From contig NC_052156.1 of NCBI RefSeq assembly GCF_902713615.1, positions 165,970,789 to 166,034,788 on the forward strand: a stretch of DNA of 64,000 nucleotides, written 5' to 3'. The notes beneath the pieces are model-generated. The model made no database searches and had not been told where the DNA came from. It saw only the letters and a list, made by a program, of their open reading frames with translations. Positions 4,189-53,419 of this stretch are shown one piece after another. Every line of letters begins with the position of its first letter. The stretch's first letter is position 1. Position numbers and translations under genes: made by a program. This stretch comes from Scyliorhinus canicula. Lineage: Eukaryota.

Positions 4189-4762
4189 GGTGTTTAATAT
4201 TAAAATGAAAACGAACACCATGAGAATGAGTGTGATTTGCTGTTCCCTTACATACTGCGTTTGCCCACATAAAATGCCCAATTGAACTGAATCGAGAGGC
4301 AGACTTTCAGCAAGAGATGCCTTTAAAGGTGATCAGCTTGATCCTTCACAAGGATATTCTTGATTCTGAAATTATCAAGCATCATGGACTCTTATCTTCC
4401 AGGGAAGGTGCCCTGGACGCCGACCATATTATCTTTCTTCTCACCTAACCTCATACTGCTCCTTCCATCTTGGCACCACAGGGACTTTGGTTGCCAGAAT
4501 CTTCTTTCACTTCCACAGAGATTCTCTTCCCTGCCATTACATTTAACATGCTTTTCTCCCTATACAGTTAGGAAAATTGGGAATCATTTAAACTCCCTTC
4601 CCTCAAACCCCACGGAGATGCTTACAGGAAGATCTGGCCTGCCTTCCTTTCCATCCGCCTGTGCATTCAAACCACTCCACCCTCTGTTTGTCAAACTCCT
4701 CATCTCAGTCCCAGCAGAGGCTGTGAATACAAAGTGAAGGAGGTCTGGGAACCTCAGTGATG

Positions 4763-37681: not shown

Positions 37682-39023
37682 TGTAAGACTCGTTCTTGTT
37701 TATTTCGGTTGTTCCCATATATTTAATTTAATTATTTTTGGTCCATGGACCCACATACGGAATGTGCCTTTTGAGCAGAGGACCCAAGCTGAAGCAGCCT
37801 GCTTGTCAGGACAGTGTGCACCAGGTTTTGTATTTTGAGGAGGAGAAACAGACTCGCTAGCTCCTGGTGAATCTTAAGAACCAGCTTTGGAGGAAGGCAG
37901 TTTGATTGGTTGGGAAGGCAGGCAGTGGGTTGGCCAGGGACAATGTTCTGTCTGACAACAGTCAGCAATTGGTTCCTGCATGATGCTTCTGAGAGCTGAT
38001 CAGAAGTGATTAGATCTTGGAAGGAGAAGAAACAGTTTCTCTCTCTCACTGAAATAACTGTTTTATTGTTCTAAAACCAGTGAACGCCTGGCACATCTTT
38101 CCTGTAAACTTGAAATGATCCTGAATTTACCGAAAAAGTAGGCAATCTTGCCAGAGAACCCGCCTGAAGTCTTTAGACCCTCTAAGGAAGAGGAGCCGTG
38201 TTTCTCCCTCTCTCGGCTGCTGATTGTCTGCTGTCTGTGTGAGTCTGCAGTGAAGATCATCACAGGCCAGGGTCCCAGGTTCGATTCCCCGCTGGGTCAT
38301 TGCCTGTGTGGAGTCTGCATGTTCTCTCCGTGTCTGTGTGGGTTTCCTCCGGGTGCTCCGGTTTCCTCCCACAGTCCAAAGACATGCAGGTTAGGTGGAT
38401 TAGCCGTGCTAAATTGCCCTTAGTGTCCAAAAAGGTTAGGAGGGGTTATTGGGTTACGGTGGAAGTGAGGGCTCAAGTGGGTCGGTGCAGAGTTGATGGG
38501 CCGAACGGCCTCCTTCTGCACTGTACGTTCTCTATTCTAAGCTGAAGGGAGCGAAAGAACCCAACTGAAGGCCTAACCTTCAAACAGAAACTAACTGGAA
38601 GATATTCACCAGAGTCAAATATCCTTATTCTTTTCTATTATCGTTACCTCTCAACTACCCCTTTCCCTCNNNNNNNNNNNNNNNNNNNNNNNNNNNNNNN
38701 NNNNNNNNNNNNNNNNNNNNNNNNNNNNNNNNNNNNNNNNNNNNNNNNNNNNNNNNNNNNNNNNNNNNNNNNNNNNNNNNNNNNNNNNNNNNNNNNNNNN
38801 NNNNNNNNNNNNNNNNNNNNNNGCCAGCTGTATTTTTTTGCCTGTTTAATTATACTTACTGTTAATAATAAAACGTTATTTATGTTTACAAACCCCGTAA
38901 CTGTGGTCAATTTAACTCAACCAAAGCCACGGGTATCGCTATAAAATCTTATTTCACCTGCGTTGCCATGCAGGGTCAAGTAGGGCTGGAATTGACCGCG
39001 CACTAAGCCCGGGTGTTGTAACA
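37682..39023 (+). mobile_element. Solo LTR (TGTAAG...GTAACA) containing a V-SINE (38266-38538) and the assembly gap
   Basis: Same family as 10494-11803, opposite orientation. Confidence 0.75.
38670..38822. other. Assembly gap (153 N)
   Basis: Run of n. Confidence 1.
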
Positions 39024-47129: not shown

Positions 47130-48062
47130 GCGGGCTGGGTCCCCCGGGGCTGTGGGTCCCCGGGGCCGGGCTGGTACCCCGTGGCTGTGGGTCCCCGGGT
47201 CTGGGCTGGGTCCCCGGGGCCGGGCTGGTACCCAGTGGCTCTGGGTCCCCGGGTCTGGGCTGGGTCCCCGGGGCCGGTCGGTCCGGGCTGGGTCCCCGGG
47301 GCTGGGTCCCCCGGGGCTGTGGGTCCCCGGGTCCGGGCTGGGTACCCGGGGCCGGTCGGTCCGGGCTGGGTCCCCGGGGCTGGGGGTCCCCAGGGCCAGG
47401 CTGGGTCCCCGGGTCCCCAGGGCCGGGCTGGGTCCCCTGGGCTCTGGGTACCCGAGGCCGGGCTGGTCCCCCGGGGCTGTGGGTCCCCGGGGCCAGACTG
47501 GGTGGCCGGGCTGTATGGCCGGGCTGGGTCCCCAGGGCTGAGGGTCCCCGGGGGCCGGGCTGGGTCCCCCGGGGCTGTGGGTCCCCGGGGCCGGGCTGGG
47601 TCCCCGGCTACCCGAGGCCGGGCTGGGTCCCCAGGGCTGTGGGTCCCCGGGGCCGGGCTGGGTCCCCGGGGGGCCGGGCTGGGTCCCCGGGGGGCCGGGC
47701 CGGGCTGGGTCCCCGGGGGGCCGGGCCGGGCTGGGTCCCCGGGGGGCCGGGCCGGGCTGGGTCCCCCGGGGGCCGGGCCGGGCTGGGTCCCCCGGGGGCC
47801 GGGCCGGGCTGGGTCCCCCGGGGGCCGGGCCGGGCTGGGTCCCCCGGGGGCCGGGCCGGGCTGGGTCCCCCGGGGGCCGGGCTGGGTCCCCCGGGGGCCG
47901 GGCCGGGCTGGGTCCCCCGGGGGCCGGGCCGGGCTGGGTCCCCCGGGGGCCGGGCTGGGTCCCCCGGGGCTGTGGGTCCCCAGGGCCGGGCTGGGTCCCC
48001 GGCTACCCGAGGCCGGGCTGGGTCCCCCGGGGCTGTGGGTTCCCGGGACCAGGCTGGGTCCC
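47130..48062. repeat. GC-rich minisatellite (GGGCCGGGCTGGGTCCCC(C)GG variants) in CDNF intron 1
   Basis: Directly visible tandem array. Confidence 0.95.
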
Positions 48063-48092
48063 ACTGACTCTACCCCGGGTCAGGCCGCTCAC

Positions 48093-48174
48093 CTTCACAT
48101 TCCCCGGGCTGGAGGGGCTGCCCGCCCTGGGCCAGCCACAGCAGCAGCAGCGGCACCGGGAGCAGCCGCTTCAT
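48093..48174 (-). CDS. CDNF: CDNF exon 1 (signal peptide MKRLLPVPLLLLWLAQGG-QPLQPGECE)
   Basis: gacATG start, hydrophobic leader, ...CE motif, donor G|GTGAGC; 82 nt, phase 1. Confidence 0.92.
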
Positions 48175-48766
48175 GTCGGGCCTGCAAACTGCCTCACAAC
48201 CGAAAGTAAACAGCGGCCGCCATTGCGGACTCCATTGGGCAGGCGCTGCTCCAATCAGCGCGCCGCTCTCCCGTCCCGCAATCCCATTGGGCAGTGTCTC
48301 TCCAATCAGCGCACGGCTCTCCCATCCCGCAATCGCATTGGGCAGAACCTCGCCAATCAGCGCACGGCTCTCCCATCCCGCAATCGCATTGGGCAGGCGC
48401 TGCTCCAATCAGCGCGCCGCTGTCCCGTCCCGCAATCCCATTGGGCAGAGCATCTCCAGTCAGCGCGCCGCTCTCCCATCCCGCAATTCCATTGGGTAGA
48501 ACCTCGCCAATCAGCGCGCGGCTCTCCCATCCCACAATCCCATTGGGCAGGCACTACTCCAATCAGCGTGCTCTAGTCCTACCCACAATCCCATTGGGCA
48601 GAGATTCTCCAATCAGCGTGTTATTTTCCCATACCACATTCCCATTGGGCAGACGCTGCTCCAATCAGCGCGCTGCTCGCCCATCCCGCAATCCCATTGG
48701 GCAGACACTGCCAGACACTCCCATTGGTCAGTTGCAGTATCTCTGGGCGGTTGTATAGTAACAACA
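48175..48766. promoter_or_regulatory. Bidirectional CDNF/HSPA14 promoter within a CpG-rich island
   Basis: Divergent ATGs separated by 592 bp; CpG-rich; many CCAAT boxes; YY1-like ATGGCGG at both ends. Confidence 0.85.
48230..48710. repeat. ~51-bp tandem repeat (about 9.3 units), each unit with ATTGG and CCAAT
   Basis: ATTGG at 48234, 48286, 48337, 48388, 48440, 48491, 48542, 48593, 48644, 48696; CCAAT at 48251, 48302, 48353, 48405, 48507, 48559, 48609, 48661 (CCAGT at 48456). Confidence 0.95.
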
Positions 48767-48823
48767 ATGGCGGCGATTGGAGTCCATCTCGGCGGCACGT
48801 GCAGCTGTGTGGCCGTCTACAAG
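48767..48823 (+). CDS. HSPA14: HSPA14 exon 1 (MAAIGVHLGGTCSCVAVYK)
   Basis: acaATGG Kozak context, HSPA14 N-terminus, AAG|GTGGGA. Confidence 0.95.
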
Positions 48824-48885
48824 GTGGGAGCCGGGCCCGTTCCATCCGGGGGGGAGTCCAGCCCGGTTCAGTCCGGCCCTGCTTC

Positions 48886-49335
48886 CTGGGGGCTGTATGT
48901 GGGCACTGGGTGGGTGTGGGCACTGGGGTGTGGGTACGGGGTGGGTGTGGGCAGTGGGGGTTGGGCACTGGGCTGTGGGGCCACTGGGGGGTGGGGGTTG
49001 GGCACTGGGGGGTGGGGCTGTATGTGGGCACTGGGGGGTGTGGGCAGTGGGGGGTTGGGCACTGGGGTGTGGGCAGTGGGGGTTGGGCACTGGGCTGTGG
49101 GGGCACTGGGTGGGGGTTGGGCACTGGGATGTGGGGCTGTATGTGGGCACTGGGGGGTGTGGGTACTGGGTGGGTGTGGGGGTTGGGCACTGGGATGTGG
49201 GGCTGTATGTGGGCACTGGGGGGTGTTTGTACTGGGTGGGTGTGGGCAGTGGGGGTTGGGCACTGGGATGTGGGGCTGTATGTGGGCACTGTGGGGGTGC
49301 TGGTGGGTGGGGTGTATCTGGGCACTGGGGGGTAT
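48886..49335. repeat. G-rich minisatellite (GGGCACTGGG / GGGGCTGTATGT variants) in HSPA14 intron 1
   Basis: Directly visible tandem array. Confidence 0.93.
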
Positions 49336-50032
49336 GTTGACGAGAGATACTAGTGAGTTTTGTTGAGAAAAATGAAGTGTAAGGGAAGCTGACCTGAAGG
49401 CTGCGAAGGTCCAGTCTGCCGTGCTTAACTAGAGACCTCAGTTCTGTATGTTAGAAAGGAAAAGGGGGCATTCTGGAGAATCGGGTAGGACCAAGTAAAC
49501 CGGTAAAGAGAGAAGTTCAGCAAGAAATAAATAGCAAGGGTTTTGGTGTGTGAGTTAGTGACACACGTACTGGGACCAGGAGGTCGATTTGGTAGGGATA
49601 CTTGAGCTGTGACCTGTGCGGCCTTGCCCAGAGGAATAGGATAATAAAAGCAAAATACTGCTGATGCTGGAAATTTGAAATAGAAACAGAAAATGCCAGA
49701 AATATTCCAGTCTGGCAGCATCTGTATAAGAAAACCAAAAGTTTTTTATTTTTCCAATCAAGCGGCAATTTAGCATAGCCAATCCACCTACCCTGCACAT
49801 CTCTCCCCCTCTCTGTTCTATCTTTTACAACTATCTGACCAAGGCAAGAGTGCTACTGACTGAGCCACGGTTCTCATACAAAGGCTGAAAGTTGGTTTGA
49901 TGATCCACTGCACCATCCCATTACTTTCATATTCTTTGAATGCAGTTTTGTTCATGGTTTCTGGCAAGCAGTAACAAAACATTTCTAATGTATTTCTCCT
50001 GTGATATAAAACTTGGATTTGCTTCCTCCTAG

Positions 50033-50113
50033 GATGGTCGAGCAGATGTTGTGGCAAATGATGCAGGTGACCGTGTTACCCCAGCAGTTGTTGCTTACAG
50101 AGAAAATGAGAAG
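50033..50113 (+). CDS. HSPA14: HSPA14 exon 2 ([22 protein letters not shown]...)
   Basis: AG/GT bounded, 81 nt, Hsp70 NBD motif. Confidence 0.96.
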
Positions 50114-50191
50114 GTAATTGAAACCATTTTATATCTTTGACATTGTACACATGGTTGAATTTTGAGTGTCATTATTTGCTTTATTTATTAG

Positions 50192-50274
50192 ATTGTTGGC
50201 TTGGCAGCAAAACATGGTAGAATCAGAAATGCTTCAAACACTATCCTGAAAGTGAAGCAGATTCTTGGCAGACG
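50192..50274 (+). CDS. HSPA14: HSPA14 exon 3 (IVGLAAKHGRIRNASNTILKVKQILGR)
   Basis: AG/GT bounded, 83 nt, frame continuous. Confidence 0.95.
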
Positions 50275-50847
50275 GTAAGAACTGAAATCTTTGTAACTAG
50301 AACTATGTAAATATATCTTTGCTGCCTCGGTGGCAATTGCAGTTCAGATTGTACTGGGAGAAGATGAATTATTTGATGATTTTATACACACTTTATAGTA
50401 AAATGCAACGGCTGCACATTAGCTGGAACTCTCCGGCCGTTGGGATCCTCGTTTCCCGCTGGTAGCGCACCCCCACCTGCGAGCTTCCCGGCAGCCCTAC
50501 CTAACCTGAACATCTTTTGACTGGGAGGAAACCGGAGCACCCGGATCAACCCATGCAGACACAGGGAGAACTCCACATTAACAGTCACCCAAGGCCAGAA
50601 TTGAACCTAGGTTCCTGGTGTTGTGAAGCAGCAGTGCTAACCACTGCCGCCATGCTGCCACACAAATGGACTGAAATCTTAATTAAAAATAAATTATTTG
50701 TCTCTCTAGTAGATGTTTTATATAAATGTTATAATCAGGGGGCACATAATGGCATTTTTTGAAAGTATTTTGCAATTTTATGCATTGACAATCCTTCAAT
50801 TAAATTGTGTCCTTCCATTTCCAAAATTGTTCCTAACTTTTTCCTAG

Positions 50848-50896
50848 TTTTGATGATCCTCAAGTTCAGAAGCATGTGGCTGAAAGTAAATGTTCT
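50848..50896 (+). CDS. HSPA14: HSPA14 exon 4 (FDDPQVQKHVAESKCS)
   Basis: AG/GT bounded, 49 nt, frame continuous. Confidence 0.93.
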
Positions 50897-51156
50897 GTAA
50901 GTATTGACATAAAGTTGGAGATGGCCTACTTTAAAAAGTTCTTTTCATGCTCTAAAGCCCGCTTTCTTAAAAACAAAACCTGAAAATAATTGTATGCTGA
51001 TATTATACTACTAGCTAATTGTTCTTCATTCTTGTCAGTCACCTTGAATACTGATGAGAGAGCATTAATGTGAGCGCAAAATACACTTCTGAAATTAATC
51101 TGCTCCATGAACACTTTGCCTTTATGACATCTAATATCAAGGCTTTGAAATAGTAA

Positions 51157-51240
51157 CAGTAAGAAGTCTTACAACACCAGGTTAAAGTCCAACAGGTTTG
51201 TTTCAAACACGAGCTTTCGGAGCACGGCTCCTTCTTCAGG
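51157..51240 (-). mobile_element. 84-bp Penelope-derived insertion carrying a minimal type I hammerhead core
   Basis: 11-bp TSD TGAAATAGTAA (51146-51156 and 51241-51251). Confidence 0.85.
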
Positions 51241-51242
51241 TG
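51208..51242 (-). ncRNA. Putative minimal hammerhead ribozyme
   Basis: Minus strand CAC-CUGAAGA-A-GGAGC-cgu-GCUCC-GAAA-GCUC/GUG: core boxes, stem II, palindromic AGCU stem III, short stem I. Confidence 0.65.
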
Positions 51243-51565
51243 AAATAGTAAGGCAGCAAAGTTCCAGGACAGAAGTGAGGTCCTATAATTTTTCTGCTGG
51301 AAAGCTGTTACGACTTTATTCAGTGGCTCATAGCAAATATATTTTGATCACTAAAAGATGGCCTTGACGATGCCGTAAATGAAAAAGCATGCCACATTGT
51401 TTTATAAAACCAAAATGCTGGGCGTACTCATCGGGTCAGGCAGCATCCATGGAGAGAATTAACATTTCAGGTGTGTGACCGTTTCACCAGAACAAATCAG
51501 CATTTTGTATTCGGGAGGACAAACCGAGCAATGGTAAAAAGAAAACATTGAGAGTATTCACTGTA

Positions 51566-51740
51566 AATAATAATAATCGCTTATTGTCACAAGTAGGCTT
51601 CAATGAAGTTACTGTGAAAAGCCCCTAGTCGCCACATTCCGGCGCCTGTTCGGGGAGGTTGGTACGGGAATTGAACCTGCGCTGCTAGCCTTGTTCTGCA
51701 TTACAAGTCAGCTGTTTAGCCCACTGTGCTAAACCAGCCC
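51566..51740 (-). mobile_element. Short tRNA SINE
   Basis: Same family as 9226-9414. Confidence 0.85.
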
Positions 51741-52040
51741 TGTTAATAGATAACTGTTCAGAACACAACCTAGCTAAAGTGTTGGTGGGGTCACATTGCA
51801 GGGGATATGTCCCTCCCCTTTGCAGCACCATACAATGGCTTTAGAGCATTTATGCTCAAATGGAAACAATAATAATTGCACTGACTGTGATACTTGCATA
51901 TACAGGAAGTACCTGCTGGTGATGACTTTACTAAAATATTATTTTTCATACCAGTACCTTAGCCAAAGGGAGGAGTAAAAGACTAGACTTTCAACTTAAC
52001 ATTACAAGAGTGACCAGGGAAGTCATGCTTGTACTGTAGT

Positions 52041-52349
52041 GGGCAGCATGGTAGCACAGTGATTAGCACTGTTGCTTCACAGCGCCAGTGTCCCAGGTTC
52101 GATTCCTGGCTTGGGTCACTGTCTGTGTGGAGTCTGCGCGTTCTCCCTGTGTCTGCGTGGGTTTCCTCCGGGTGCTCCGGTTTCCTCTCTCAAGTCCTGA
52201 AAGACGTGCTGTTAGATGAATTGGACATTCTGAATTCTTCCTCTCTGTACCCGAACAGGGACTGGAATGTAGTGACTAGGGGGTTTTCACAGTAGCTTCA
52301 TCGCAGTGTTAATGTAAGCCTGCTTGTGACAATAATGAAGATTACTATT
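52041..52349 (+). mobile_element. Full V-SINE
   Basis: A/B boxes, V-domain, shared tail. Confidence 0.9.
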
Positions 52350-52496
52350 GAAAAATTAGTCTGCTAAACATACAGGATTTGTCATGGAACATCAAAAATG
52401 TTTACAGCTTGCAGCTGTTGCAATCGTTCTGTTGCTCAGAATTAATGATGTTGTAATTGGACCCTGGCTGCGTTGTCTTTTTCAATGTTTAAACAG

Positions 52497-52602
52497 GTTA
52501 TTGATAAGGATGGCAAACCCACTTACGAGATTGATACTGGGGAAGAGCTCAAGATTGTCCCTCCAGAAGAAGTAATGAAGTTGATTTTTGAAAAAACGAA
52601 AG
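52497..52602 (+). CDS. HSPA14: HSPA14 exon 5 (VIDKDGKPTYEIDTGEE...KTK), GC donor
   Basis: aacAG acceptor; AAG|GCGAGT donor gives 106 nt and keeps frame with exon 6. Confidence 0.9.
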
Positions 52603-53419
52603 GCGAGTATGATTCTGCTTTCAGAGGGGAAATGTGTCTTAAATTTTGCTTACATTCAAAAATGACCAGGCTTCAACAGAGACTTAATCGTGGCTCGAGG
52701 GAAGGGTCTGTCTTGGCCATACAGCATTGAGTAGTAAAGGAGGCCTATACCATGGCAATGGGTGTGTTATGTAAATTGTGTTTGTGTGAGTTCAAGCTAC
52801 TTCACTAGGAAGTAGACAAACGCTTAGGAACAGCTGAAATGTTTTTAGGAACTAACTTGCAACGTTGCTAGGAACATAAAGTGGCATCCGTATAATGAGC
52901 ATTGTGATTTTAATCTGAGAATTAGGAGACCTGTTGCCTACAGCATCAAGACGGTATTCAACAGAATATGGCACCAAAGAGCCCCAATAAAATTCAAGTT
53001 CCTGGGTGTCATATCAAAGCCTATCTACTAGCTAAAATCATAACTGACGTAAAGGAAGATTATCCCAGTTGTCAGAAACCACTCGCCATCCTGACTTGAG
53101 CATCTATTGTTCTTCCGTCACCATGTCTGGGACAGAATTCTGGAGTTCCCGATCAGAACACTGCAGAGGGAGCCATCATCACAACAATGGCTCCTGAGGA
53201 AGAGACTCTGCACAATAAGTCAGCCTTTGCAAGCACTGCCCACATCTGGAGAACAAATATAAATTAAACCCCCAAAATTCAGGAACCTGAACTGTTGTGA
53301 AGTGGAACAGTGATGATCGCACTGCAATGGGCATTCTAAAAGGTTTTGATCCTGTGATGTCTGTATTCTAGTCTGGCAGGAGAAAAAAGAGCGACTTCTT
53401 GTGTATCATAACCATGGGA

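What the first reader, a model, noticed from the sequence alone, without database searches (positions are those of the whole stretch)
48230..48727. Bidirectional promoter built from a ~51-bp tandem array of opposed CCAAT boxes
Seen: about 80% of the 592 bp between the CDNF and HSPA14 start codons is about nine tandem copies of CCCATTGGGCAG..N..CCAATCAGCGCG...TCCC(G/A)CAAT. This gives 8 intact CCAAT on + and 11 on -, with a 51-52 bp period (close to five helical turns). The boxes are conserved while the spacers drift. TCCC(A/G)CAATC(C/G)CATTG also resembles the ZNF143/Staf site, with one extra base. Known: NF-Y and ZNF143 sites are enriched in bidirectional promoters, usually in a few copies. 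Inference: a minisatellite-amplified, helically phased NF-Y platform whose copy number could tune two proteostasis genes together.
Basis: partly seen in the sequence, partly recalled or inferred. Interest (0 to 1): 0.7.

Follow-up and report, generated by a model that had tools for sequence, protein, structure and literature searches.

The report
Catshark promoter with amplified CCAAT boxes
In the small-spotted catshark, the short shared promoter between the back-to-back genes CDNF and HSPA14 has been copied about nine times in tandem, giving 19 CCAAT boxes; an electric ray amplified the same promoter piece independently, which makes this a natural test of how repeat number affects a two-way promoter.

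Summary
A 51-bp x 9.3 tandem array (48232-48706) fills 80% of the 592 bp between the CDNF (-) and HSPA14 (+) start codons. It carries 8 forward and 11 inverted CCAAT boxes.

- **Origin:** Each unit is an "everted" pair, ATTGG-N11/12-CCAAT. It matches a single-copy module next to CDNF in zebra shark and whale shark. So the array amplifies an old promoter element.
- **Conservation:** The head-to-head gene pair and several CCAAT boxes occur in all six other species read.
- **Copy number:** The sister species S. torazame has a gap of only 313 bp. The electric ray Narcine built its own 32-bp x 14.8 CCAAT array in the same gap.
- **Transcripts:** Spliced transcript contigs start at the two array edges (48206 and 48718). 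None lies inside the array.
- **Constraint and chromatin:** The boxes are much better kept than the spacers. The gap is a CpG island.
- **Not supported:** The ZNF143 resemblance fails a scan. Helical phasing holds only between neighbouring units.
- **Not tested:** NF-Y binding, exact start sites, and any effect of copy number on expression.
- **Rival:** Tandem repeats pile up around this promoter in general, so neutral instability is a serious alternative.

The scan has noted similar CCAAT arrays at other catshark promoters. I rate this a new variant of a known kind, of moderate interest.

The parts
48232..48706 (.). Tandem array, 51-52 bp x 9.3. Units: u1 48231-48282, u2 -48333, u3 -48384, u4 -48436, u5 -48487, u6 -48538, u7 -48589, u8 -48640, u9 -48692, and partial u10 from 48693. 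Three unit subtypes form an A-B-C order: A = u1, u4, u7, u9; B = u2, u5, u8; C = u3, u6.
   Evidence: TRF; unit alignment and identity matrix, lag-3 identity 0.84 against lag-1 0.80
48234..48665 (.). Eight everted CCAAT pairs (ATTGG-N11/12-CCAAT), starting at 48234, 48286, 48337, 48388, 48491, 48542, 48593 and 48644. The u5 pair is broken by CCAGT at 48456-48460.
   Evidence: Pattern search: 8 found against 0.69 expected. The same module lies in the orthologous promoters of Stegostoma, Rhincodon, Heptranchias and Narcine. The unit aligns to Stegostoma and Rhincodon pair 1 with 0 of 500 shuffles reaching the score.
48721..48729 (-). Conserved proximal inverted CCAAT box just outside the array. 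It is the only full RRCCAATSR match in the gap and lies 44 bp before the HSPA14 ATG.
   Evidence: The ATTGGTCAG box aligns across sharks.
48093..48206 (-). CDNF exon 1. The coding part runs from 48174 down to 48093 (27 codons plus 1 base, with a GT donor below). At least 32 nt of 5' UTR reach 48206, which is 25 bp from the array.
   Evidence: Sequence. RNA-like contig X13 record 10 covers 48093-48206; stranded reads of X22 lie on the strand expected for a minus-strand RNA. ARMET-family exons lie further down the minus strand.
48718..48823 (+). HSPA14 exon 1. The ATG is at 48767 and the coding part ends at 48823. The longest assembled 5' end is at 48718, which is 12 bp past the array.
   Evidence: Spliced contig X3 record 17 starts at 48718. 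The joint from 48821/48823 to 50031/50033 has GT..AG ends in X3, X13 and X22. The N-terminus is conserved in six species.
48175..48231 (.). Unique 57-bp stretch between the CDNF ATG and the first unit (CDNF 5' UTR plus about 25 bp).
47131..47985 (.). G+C-rich minisatellites (26-52 bp units, GC 0.8-0.9) in CDNF intron 1. They carry no CCAAT boxes. They are part of the tandem-repeat pile-up around this promoter.
48889..49299 (.). G-rich minisatellite (14-119 bp units) in HSPA14 intron 1, with GC skew up to +0.68 on the coding strand.

Best explanation
**What it is.** The array is a catshark-lineage minisatellite. It amplifies one pre-existing piece of an old, CpG-island, NF-Y-type bidirectional promoter. 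That piece is the CDNF-proximal everted CCAAT pair plus about 25 bp beside it.

**How it arose.** An ancestral promoter of about 250-350 bp with 3-8 scattered CCAAT boxes gained tandem copies of this module. At least one later step copied a 3-unit (154-bp) block. The region between the two transcript starts grew to about 510 bp.

**How it most likely works (inferred).** NF-Y binds many of the units. Probably one trimer sits per unit, in either orientation, because the two boxes of a pair are too close for comfortable double occupancy. This would keep the whole gap free of nucleosomes and methylation. CDNF and HSPA14 are then transcribed outward from its two edges.

**Why it exists (inferred).** The supply of new copies comes from a general tandem-repeat instability centred on this promoter. 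The boxes are kept by selection while the spacers decay.

**Shown:** the array, its orthology to a single-copy module, the transcript ends at its edges, CpG-island status, and better conservation of the boxes.

**Inferred:** NF-Y occupancy, nucleosome exclusion, and any effect of copy number.
For: - **Array and boxes:**
- **Orthology:** the unit aligns over about 43 bp to the single CDNF-proximal pair of Stegostoma (L002:3663-3706) and Rhincodon, and 0 of 500 shuffles reach the score. That pair lies 52-72 bp before the CDNF start in Stegostoma; unit 1 lies 60-81 bp before it in the catshark.
- **Module conservation:** 6 of the 8 everted pairs found in 172 kb of fetched loci fall in this promoter.
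- **Promoter conservation:** CDNF(-)/HSPA14(+) lie head to head, with several CCAAT boxes, in tortoise, three sharks and two rays.
- **Copy number change:** the gap is 592 bp here and 313 bp in S. torazame, where two assemblies agree. Identity is highest at lag 3.
- **Constraint:** 1 change in the boxes against 7.8 expected. Units u7 and u8 are 24-32% diverged outside the boxes but keep all four boxes.
- **Flanks:** 17 of 19 boxes fit CCAATSR (consensus from PMC11802806).
- **CpG island:** GC 0.60 and CpG observed/expected 0.85, against 0.28-0.48 in the flanks.
- **Transcripts:** 5' ends lie at 48206 and 48718, with no RNA contig depth in 48314-48627.
- **Parallel case:** Narcine has an independent 32-bp x 14.8 array whose unit resembles the same module.
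- **Precedent:** a bidirectional promoter run by an NF-Y-bound array of four CCAAT boxes (PMC1802594).
Against: - No binding, chromatin or reporter data exist for this locus.
- Array boxes lack the 5' RR of the NF-Y consensus; only the proximal box is a full match.
- Boxes within a unit are 16-17 bp apart (centre to centre). That is below the 19 bp minimum seen for double CCAAT in NF-Y-bound human regions (PMC4889920). Footprints of -7 to +17 (PMC4982600) would overlap by 2-3 bp.
- NF-Y boxes normally act at -60 to -100 from a start site (PMC11802806), so units u3-u7 are far from both starts.
- Flanking introns carry CCAAT-free minisatellites, and 84% of the window's tandem-repeat bases lie within 2 kb of the ATG. 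Amplification therefore needs no selection.
- Transcript ends come from contigs, which cannot fix a start site.
- Copy number was not confirmed in a second data set.
- The constraint statistics are modest and the units are not independent.
Confidence: 0.6

Rival explanations
1. Neutral promoter minisatellite. This promoter is a hot spot for tandem duplication. The CCAAT module was copied only because it was there. The outermost copies do the work of the ancestral boxes, and the inner copies are tolerated passengers whose number drifts.
For: - Tandem repeats are about 78-fold denser within 2 kb of the ATG than in the rest of the window.
- CCAAT-free arrays flank the promoter in catshark, Narcine and Leucoraja.
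- Copy number differs between sister species.
- The Narcine array is young (91-95% identity) and says nothing about constraint.
- Units u7 and u8 show CpG decay.
- A tandem duplication inside a two-way promoter leaves each start site with its own nearby boxes.
Against: - The boxes are kept far better than the spacers, including in the oldest inner units.
- The whole 592-bp gap keeps CpG-island composition.
- CCAAT arrays have been noted at several other catshark promoters; these notes are mostly unchecked.
- The same module expanded twice at this locus.
Confidence: 0.3
2. ZNF143/Staf (or THAP11) platform. The TCCC(A/G)CAAT...CATTG part of each unit is the functional site, and the CCAAT boxes are secondary.
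For: - ZNF143 sites are enriched in bidirectional promoters (PMC3082894).
- The unit shares TCCC(A) and CATTG with the 18-bp site.
Against: - A scan with the 14 specified positions shared by published SBS1 sequences (PMC3627581) finds no hit in the array at up to 3 mismatches, and only 3 in the window against 4.7 expected.
- The likeness needs an extra base, which a zinc-finger array should not tolerate.
- This segment varies more among units than the CCAAT boxes do.
Confidence: 0.03
3. Assembly artefact. The array is over-expanded or mis-assembled in this one assembly.
For: - Copy number rests on one assembly.
- The short-read DNA run laid gave only traces across 48314-48784.
Against: - The units differ from one another by 6-33%, so each is distinguishable, and 475 bp is far shorter than a long read.
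- The left junction plus unit 1 is confirmed by a DNA contig (48092-48263, 1 mismatch). The right junction is confirmed by RNA contigs from other samples.
- Shorter but similar promoter structure shows through the S. torazame gene models.
Confidence: 0.03

Closest known systems
Mouse/human Mrps12-Sarsm (Sars2) bidirectional promoter with an NF-Y-bound array of 4 CCAAT boxes (PMC1802594)
   Same: A TATA-less gap under 1 kb between divergent housekeeping-type genes, governed by several CCAAT boxes. NF-Y can act in both directions, and different boxes favour different directions.
   Different: It has four boxes, all on one strand, within 200 bp, and is not a tandem repeat. Here there are 19 boxes in 9.3 repeated units, arranged as everted pairs, and NF-Y binding is not shown.
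Human ABO upstream minisatellite enhancer carrying CBF/NF-Y motifs (Kominato 1997, Irshaid 1999, Yu 2000, as cited in PMC2988417)
   Same: A minisatellite whose unit carries an NF-Y site. The number of units differs between alleles, and more units gave higher reporter activity.
   Different: It is a distal enhancer about 4 kb upstream, with 1 or 4 units, serving one gene. Here the array is the core two-way promoter itself, and copy-number effects are untested.
LTR12/ERV9 repeats with closely packed CCAAT boxes bound by NF-Y (PMC4982600, PMC4889920, PMC12065363)
   Same: Tandemly repeated CCAAT boxes at near-minimal spacing that act as NF-Y landing platforms.
   Different: Those are carried by a retroelement, with direct repeats at 19-24 and 41 bp. 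Here the unit is orthologous to a single-copy host promoter module and the boxes alternate in orientation.
Cell-cycle promoters with 2-3 precisely spaced CCAAT boxes (cyclin B2, cdc25C, TOP2A/B; PMC1802594, PMC4982600)
   Same: Several NF-Y boxes at preferred distances. Peaks at 31, 41, 52 and 63 bp are reported. The 51-52 bp period here and the 32 bp period in Narcine fall on such peaks.
   Different: Those have few boxes, mostly direct repeats, and are not minisatellites.
Unstable tandem repeats in promoters as tuners of expression (Vinces 2009 as cited in PMC4203960; PMC4857002; PMC3899988)
   Same: Repeat number in a promoter changes quickly and can change output and chromatin.
   Different: The known cases are mostly short, low-complexity repeats. 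Here each 51-bp unit is a composite transcription-factor module.
Other CCAAT arrays noted by this scan in the same genome (CENPF-like, FAN1, NME4, TYSND1, HNRNPU and another two-way promoter)
   Same: Promoter-proximal tandem arrays of 8-30 CCAAT boxes. For the CENPF-like gene, a follow-up reported a single box in three other sharks and rays.
   Different: They have different units and periods (26-52 bp). Only this one has everted pairs between two genes. All but one of those notes are unchecked.

Membership tests
NF-Y (CCAAT-box) bidirectional promoter | Two divergent genes with starts less than 1 kb apart | tested here: met
   The ATG-ATG gap is 592 bp. Transcript contig ends lie at 48206 (-) and 48718 (+), 512 bp apart.
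NF-Y (CCAAT-box) bidirectional promoter | CCAAT pentamers with NF-Y-type flanks (RRCCAATSR; PMC11802806) | tested here: inconclusive
   All 19 pentamers are intact and 17 fit CCAATSR. Only the proximal box at 48721-48729 fits the full consensus; the array boxes have pyrimidines in place of RR.
NF-Y (CCAAT-box) bidirectional promoter | Boxes at about -60 to -100 from the start sites | tested here: inconclusive
   Counted from the contig 5' ends, the nearest boxes lie at about -28, -45 and -80 (CDNF) and -22 and -57 (HSPA14). Contigs cannot fix a start site.
NF-Y (CCAAT-box) bidirectional promoter | CCAAT boxes conserved at the orthologous promoter | tested here: met
   There are 3-8 boxes in the 207-347 bp gaps of five species and 17 in the 681-bp Narcine gap. 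The everted pair is conserved in sharks and Narcine, and the proximal ATTGGTCAG box in sharks.
NF-Y (CCAAT-box) bidirectional promoter | NF-Y occupancy and dependence (ChIP, EMSA, box mutation) | not testable with these tools
   No binding or reporter data are available.
Minisatellite / VNTR | Head-to-tail units of 10-100 bp | tested here: met
   51 bp x 9.3 at 81% identity.
Minisatellite / VNTR | Copy number varies between individuals or close species | tested here: inconclusive
   Between species, the S. torazame gap is 279 bp (about 5.4 units) shorter by gene tables in two assemblies, but its DNA could not be read. Within the species, the DNA run gave too little cover.
CpG-island promoter | GC at least 0.5, CpG observed/expected at least 0.6, length over 200 bp | tested here: met
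   GC 0.60 and observed/expected 0.85 over 592 bp; the flanks are at 0.28-0.48.
ZNF143/Staf binding site (SBS1) | 18-bp site TTCCCA-NN-ATGCA-NN-GCG (sequences printed in PMC3627581) | tested here: not met
   No match in the array at up to 3 mismatches of the 14 specified positions.
Transposon-borne CCAAT repeats (LTR12 type) | The array lies inside a mobile element and recurs elsewhere | tested here: not met
   The unit is orthologous to a single-copy promoter module in two sharks. The everted pattern occurs nowhere else in the window.

The most novel reading that the evidence does not exclude
In elasmobranchs, NF-Y-bound, nucleosome-free promoters may be preferred birthplaces of minisatellites. 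CCAAT modules would then be amplified again and again: twice at this one promoter, in a shark and a ray, and at several other catshark promoters. The resulting arrays would be kept because box number sets the width of the open region and the output or balance of the two genes. That would make CCAAT copy number a fast-evolving, heritable dial on promoters. The S. canicula (592 bp) and S. torazame (313 bp) pair would be a ready natural experiment.
Probability: 0.2. Interest if true: 0.75.

Novelty: new variant of a known kind. Interest (0 to 1): 0.5.

Why it matters
Multi-CCAAT promoters, NF-Y-binding minisatellites and promoter tandem repeats are each known. A core two-way promoter made almost wholly of about nine copies of a conserved everted CCAAT pair has not turned up in the papers searched. 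Neither has a second, independent amplification of the same module in a ray.

Three questions become testable:
- Can two NF-Y trimers share a pair only 16-17 bp apart?
- Do extra NF-Y sites widen the open region or change the balance between two divergent genes?
- Is promoter-centred repeat instability a regular source of regulatory change in sharks and rays?

The two genes serve protein folding at the ribosome (HSPA14) and in the ER (CDNF), so a shared dial on both would be of physiological interest. If the extra copies are neutral, the locus still shows how far a two-way promoter can be stretched without breaking.

Tried and rejected
- **ZNF143 site:** a scan found nothing in the array, so this reading is rejected.
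- **Hairpin or cruciform as a driver of instability:** four units folded as single-stranded DNA are no more stable than shuffles (z = -0.30), so this is rejected.
- **Independent check of copy number:** DNA run X1 covers only 48092-48263 plus traces, so this stays unresolved.
- **Exact start sites:** raw-read run X22 gave about one read over CDNF exon 1 and almost none over HSPA14 exon 1. Only contig ends are available.
- **First route to shark orthologues failed:** a search with the mammalian cluster representative P0008 listed only tetrapods. A hemichordate outgroup query (P0057) and then the Stegostoma protein worked.
- **DNA not served:** S. torazame (two assemblies), Mustelus, Carcharodon, Hemitrygon and the catshark's own record returned no DNA because the files are too large. 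Only gene-table gaps could be used.
- **Transposon origin:** rejected.
- **Strict helical phasing:** rejected, because 51.3 bp is about 4.9 turns and the offset accumulates.

Full report
**1. The observation**

Tandem Repeats Finder reports an array at 48232-48706 with period 51, 9.3 copies and 81% matches. It also reports a 154-bp period at 85%. The CDNF start codon lies at 48174-48172 on the minus strand and the HSPA14 ATG at 48767, so the gap is 592 bp. The public annotation gives the same gap. The array fills 80% of it.

Between 48230 and 48727 there are exactly 8 CCAAT on the plus strand and 11 on the minus strand, 50-52 bp apart. One forward box has mutated to CCAGT at 48456-48460. The two 500-bp bins over the array hold 10 boxes each, against a window mean of 1.4.

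**2. Anatomy of the array**

Cutting at the inverted boxes gives nine full units and a partial tenth. Each unit holds an inverted box, an 11-12 bp spacer, a forward box, and about 26 bp up to the next unit. The two boxes point away from each other, which I call an everted pair.

- This everted pattern occurs 8 times in the window, all in the array, against 0.69 expected by chance.
- The units fall into three subtypes in an A-B-C order. Identity peaks at lag 3 (0.84 against 0.80 at lag 1). Pairs u1/u4, u2/u5 and u3/u6 are 94%, 88% and 90% alike. At least one step therefore copied a 3-unit block.
- Units u7 and u8 are the most diverged (67-77% identity) and have lost CpGs.

**3. Are the boxes constrained?**

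- The ten box columns carry 1 difference in 90 cells. The other 41 columns carry 54 in 369.
- Counted as minimum changes, that is 1 against 7.8 expected (Poisson P = 0.004), or P = 0.014 when CpG columns are left out.
- Units u7 and u8 differ from the consensus at 13 and 10 of 41 non-box positions but at none of 20 box positions (P = 0.0013).
- The near-invariant blocks extend beyond the pentamers: ATTGGGCAG has 1 difference in 81 cells and CCAATCAGCG has 1 in 90.

The units are related to each other, so these figures are indicative and not exact.

**4. The genes and the RNA evidence**

Minus-strand exons match the MANF/CDNF family. Plus-strand exons match Hsp70 weakly. The best matches in two large protein searches are all HSPA14. 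The 90% cluster of the closest shark protein includes the entry named HSPA14 of Scyliorhinus canicula. I searched exons one at a time by reference and built no joined spliced model.

One reads call laid four public runs on 48000-52700.

- Two runs of unknown type (X3, X13) hold spliced contigs, with GT..AG joints at 48823/50033, 50111/50190, 50273/50847 and 50896/52497.
- The raw RNA run X22 shows the same joints, on the strand expected for a plus-strand gene.
- The longest HSPA14 contig starts at 48718, which is 12 bp past the array. A CDNF exon-1 contig spans 48093-48206 and ends 25 bp short of the array.
- None of the three RNA-type runs has depth in 48314-48627.
- The DNA run X1 confirms the left junction and first unit (48092-48263, one mismatch). 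It is too thin to confirm copy number.

Contigs cannot fix a start site, and an absence of contigs is weak evidence.

**5. Cross-species comparison**

I reached shark orthologues through an HSPA14 exon, then a cluster representative, then an outgroup query. I then fetched or tabulated eleven loci. CDNF and HSPA14 lie head to head in all of them.

| Species | ATG-to-ATG gap (bp) |
|---|---|
| S. canicula | 592 |
| S. torazame | 313 |
| Mustelus | 338 |
| Carcharodon | 345 |
| Stegostoma | 347 |
| Rhincodon | 264 |
| Heptranchias | 256 |
| Leucoraja | 207 |
| Narcine | 681 |
| Gopherus | 317 |

Some gene models start CDNF too far upstream, so their gaps are minimum values. For S. torazame the two assemblies agree, once the 35-residue N-terminal extension of the older HSPA14 model is allowed for.

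DNA could be read for six species.

- All six carry several CCAAT boxes in the gap: 3-8 in five of them, and 17 in Narcine. Only Narcine has a tandem array.
- The everted pair is conserved. Of the 8 matches in 172 kb of fetched loci, 6 lie in this promoter: Stegostoma 2, Rhincodon 2, Heptranchias 1 and Narcine 1.
- The catshark unit aligns over about 43 bp to the CDNF-proximal pair of Stegostoma and Rhincodon, and no shuffle in 500 reaches the score. That pair sits at the same distance from the CDNF start as catshark unit 1.
- A proximal inverted box (ATTGGTCAG) just before the HSPA14 ATG is conserved in sharks. In the catshark it is the only full RRCCAATSR match in the gap (48721-48729).

The array is therefore an amplification of an old host promoter module and not a transposon.

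The extended S. torazame model translates its last 105 bp of promoter. It shows three inverted boxes. The remaining 208 bp leave room for about three units, but that number is an inference.

**6. A parallel case and a hot spot**

Narcine bancroftii has its own array in the same gap: 32 bp x 14.8 at 91% identity, with a 63-bp higher order at 95% and one forward box per unit. Its unit resembles the forward-box half of the catshark unit (shuffle fraction 0.02).

Tandem repeats also cluster around this promoter.

- 1720 of the 2051 tandem-repeat bases in the 64-kb window lie within 2 kb of the HSPA14 ATG. They sit in both first introns as well as the gap.
- Narcine (1807 bases) and Leucoraja (1720 bases) show the same pile-up.
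- Stegostoma, Rhincodon and Gopherus have none, and Heptranchias has 93.

The flanking arrays carry no CCAAT boxes. The supply of duplications is therefore a property of the locus and does not depend on the motif.

**7. Likely mechanism**

The gap is a CpG island (GC 0.60, CpG observed/expected 0.85, flanks 0.28-0.48). Seventeen of the 19 boxes fit CCAATSR, but the array boxes lack the 5' purines (consensus from PMC11802806).

- **Footprint geometry.** NF-Y contacts run from -7 to +17 relative to the first C of the box (PMC4982600). On that footprint the two boxes of a unit overlap by 2-3 bp, and a 4-5 bp gap is left before the next unit. Two footprints would thus almost exactly tile each 51-bp unit.
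- **Pair spacing.** The centre-to-centre distance within a pair is 16-17 bp. That is below the 19 bp minimum seen for double CCAAT in NF-Y-bound human regions (PMC4889920). One trimer per unit, in either orientation, is the safer reading.
- **Period.** Same-strand boxes recur at 51-52 bp, one of the preferred NF-Y pair distances (31, 41, 52 and 63 bp; PMC4982600). However, 51.3 bp is about 4.9 turns, so phase drifts along the array.
- **Role of NF-Y.** NF-Y keeps the upstream edge of core promoters free of nucleosomes and acts in both directions (PMC11802806, PMC1802594).

My best account is an NF-Y-held open region of about 0.5 kb, with one gene leaving from each edge. I hold the functional part of this at about 0.6.

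**8. Rivals**

- **Neutral passenger copies (about 0.3).** This fits the hot spot and the fast change in copy number. It fits less well with intact boxes in the oldest units and an island-like composition throughout.
- **ZNF143 platform.** The array has no match to the 18-bp site at up to 3 mismatches (site from PMC3627581).
- **Hairpin-driven instability.** No support (z = -0.30).
- **Assembly artefact.** Unlikely, because the units are distinct and both junctions are seen in other data.

**9. What is known, and novelty**

- Arrays of a few CCAAT boxes run bidirectional and cell-cycle promoters (PMC1802594).
- An NF-Y-binding minisatellite enhancer whose repeat number affects activity is known at ABO (cited in PMC2988417).
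- LTR12 elements carry packed CCAAT repeats (PMC4982600).
- Promoter tandem repeats are known modifiers of expression (PMC4857002).
- This scan has noted CCAAT arrays at other catshark promoters. One was followed up and reported as a lineage-specific expansion of a single box.

What is new here is the scale, the everted-pair unit, the position as the entire core of a two-way promoter, and the independent second amplification in a ray. I class it as a new variant of a known kind, with interest 0.5.

Noticed in passing
L005:3353-3817 (Narcine bancroftii): An independent 32-bp x 14.8 tandem array with one forward CCAAT per unit (63-bp higher order, 95% identity). It lies in the same CDNF-HSPA14 gap and starts only 34 bp from the CDNF ATG.
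   Followed up: partly
window 47131-47985 and 48889-49299; L005:2001-2484 and 4245-4707; L006:2008-3425: Tandem repeats pile up around this promoter in catshark, Narcine and Leucoraja but not in Stegostoma, Rhincodon or Gopherus. In the window, 84% of all tandem-repeat bases lie within 2 kb of the HSPA14 ATG.
   Followed up: partly
window 48889-49299: The HSPA14 intron-1 minisatellite is strongly G-rich on the coding strand (GC skew up to +0.68) just downstream of the start. This composition is often linked to R-loop-prone CpG-island promoters.
   Followed up: no
P0394 (S. torazame, older assembly); L002 and L003 CDNF models: Some gene models read promoter DNA as protein. The S. torazame HSPA14 model has a 35-residue N-terminal extension that translates three inverted CCAAT boxes. 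The Rhincodon and Stegostoma CDNF models start upstream of the likely signal-peptide methionine and run through the everted pair.
   Followed up: partly
window 49727-49883, 50512-50668, 51140-51296, 51454-51767, 51925-52395: Contig depth of 1e5-1e6 in all runs, with many opposite-strand joints. These are high-copy interspersed repeats in the HSPA14 introns. The 51146-51251 stretch overlaps the hammerhead cassette noted by another reader (s1-243690).
   Followed up: no
window 48011-48122: An RNA-like contig (X13 record 9) runs unspliced across the CDNF exon 1/intron 1 border. It may be pre-mRNA, or may reflect copies of the intron minisatellite expressed elsewhere.
   Followed up: no
window 48093-48206 (X13 record 10): The 137-nt contig matches only over 114 nt. 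Its last 23 nt, beyond 48206 on the upstream side, fit nothing here. They could be a library adaptor marking a true 5' end, or an allele difference.
   Followed up: no
window 38670-38822: A run of 153 N (assembly gap or masked stretch) in CDNF intron 1. I left it as it is.
   Followed up: no
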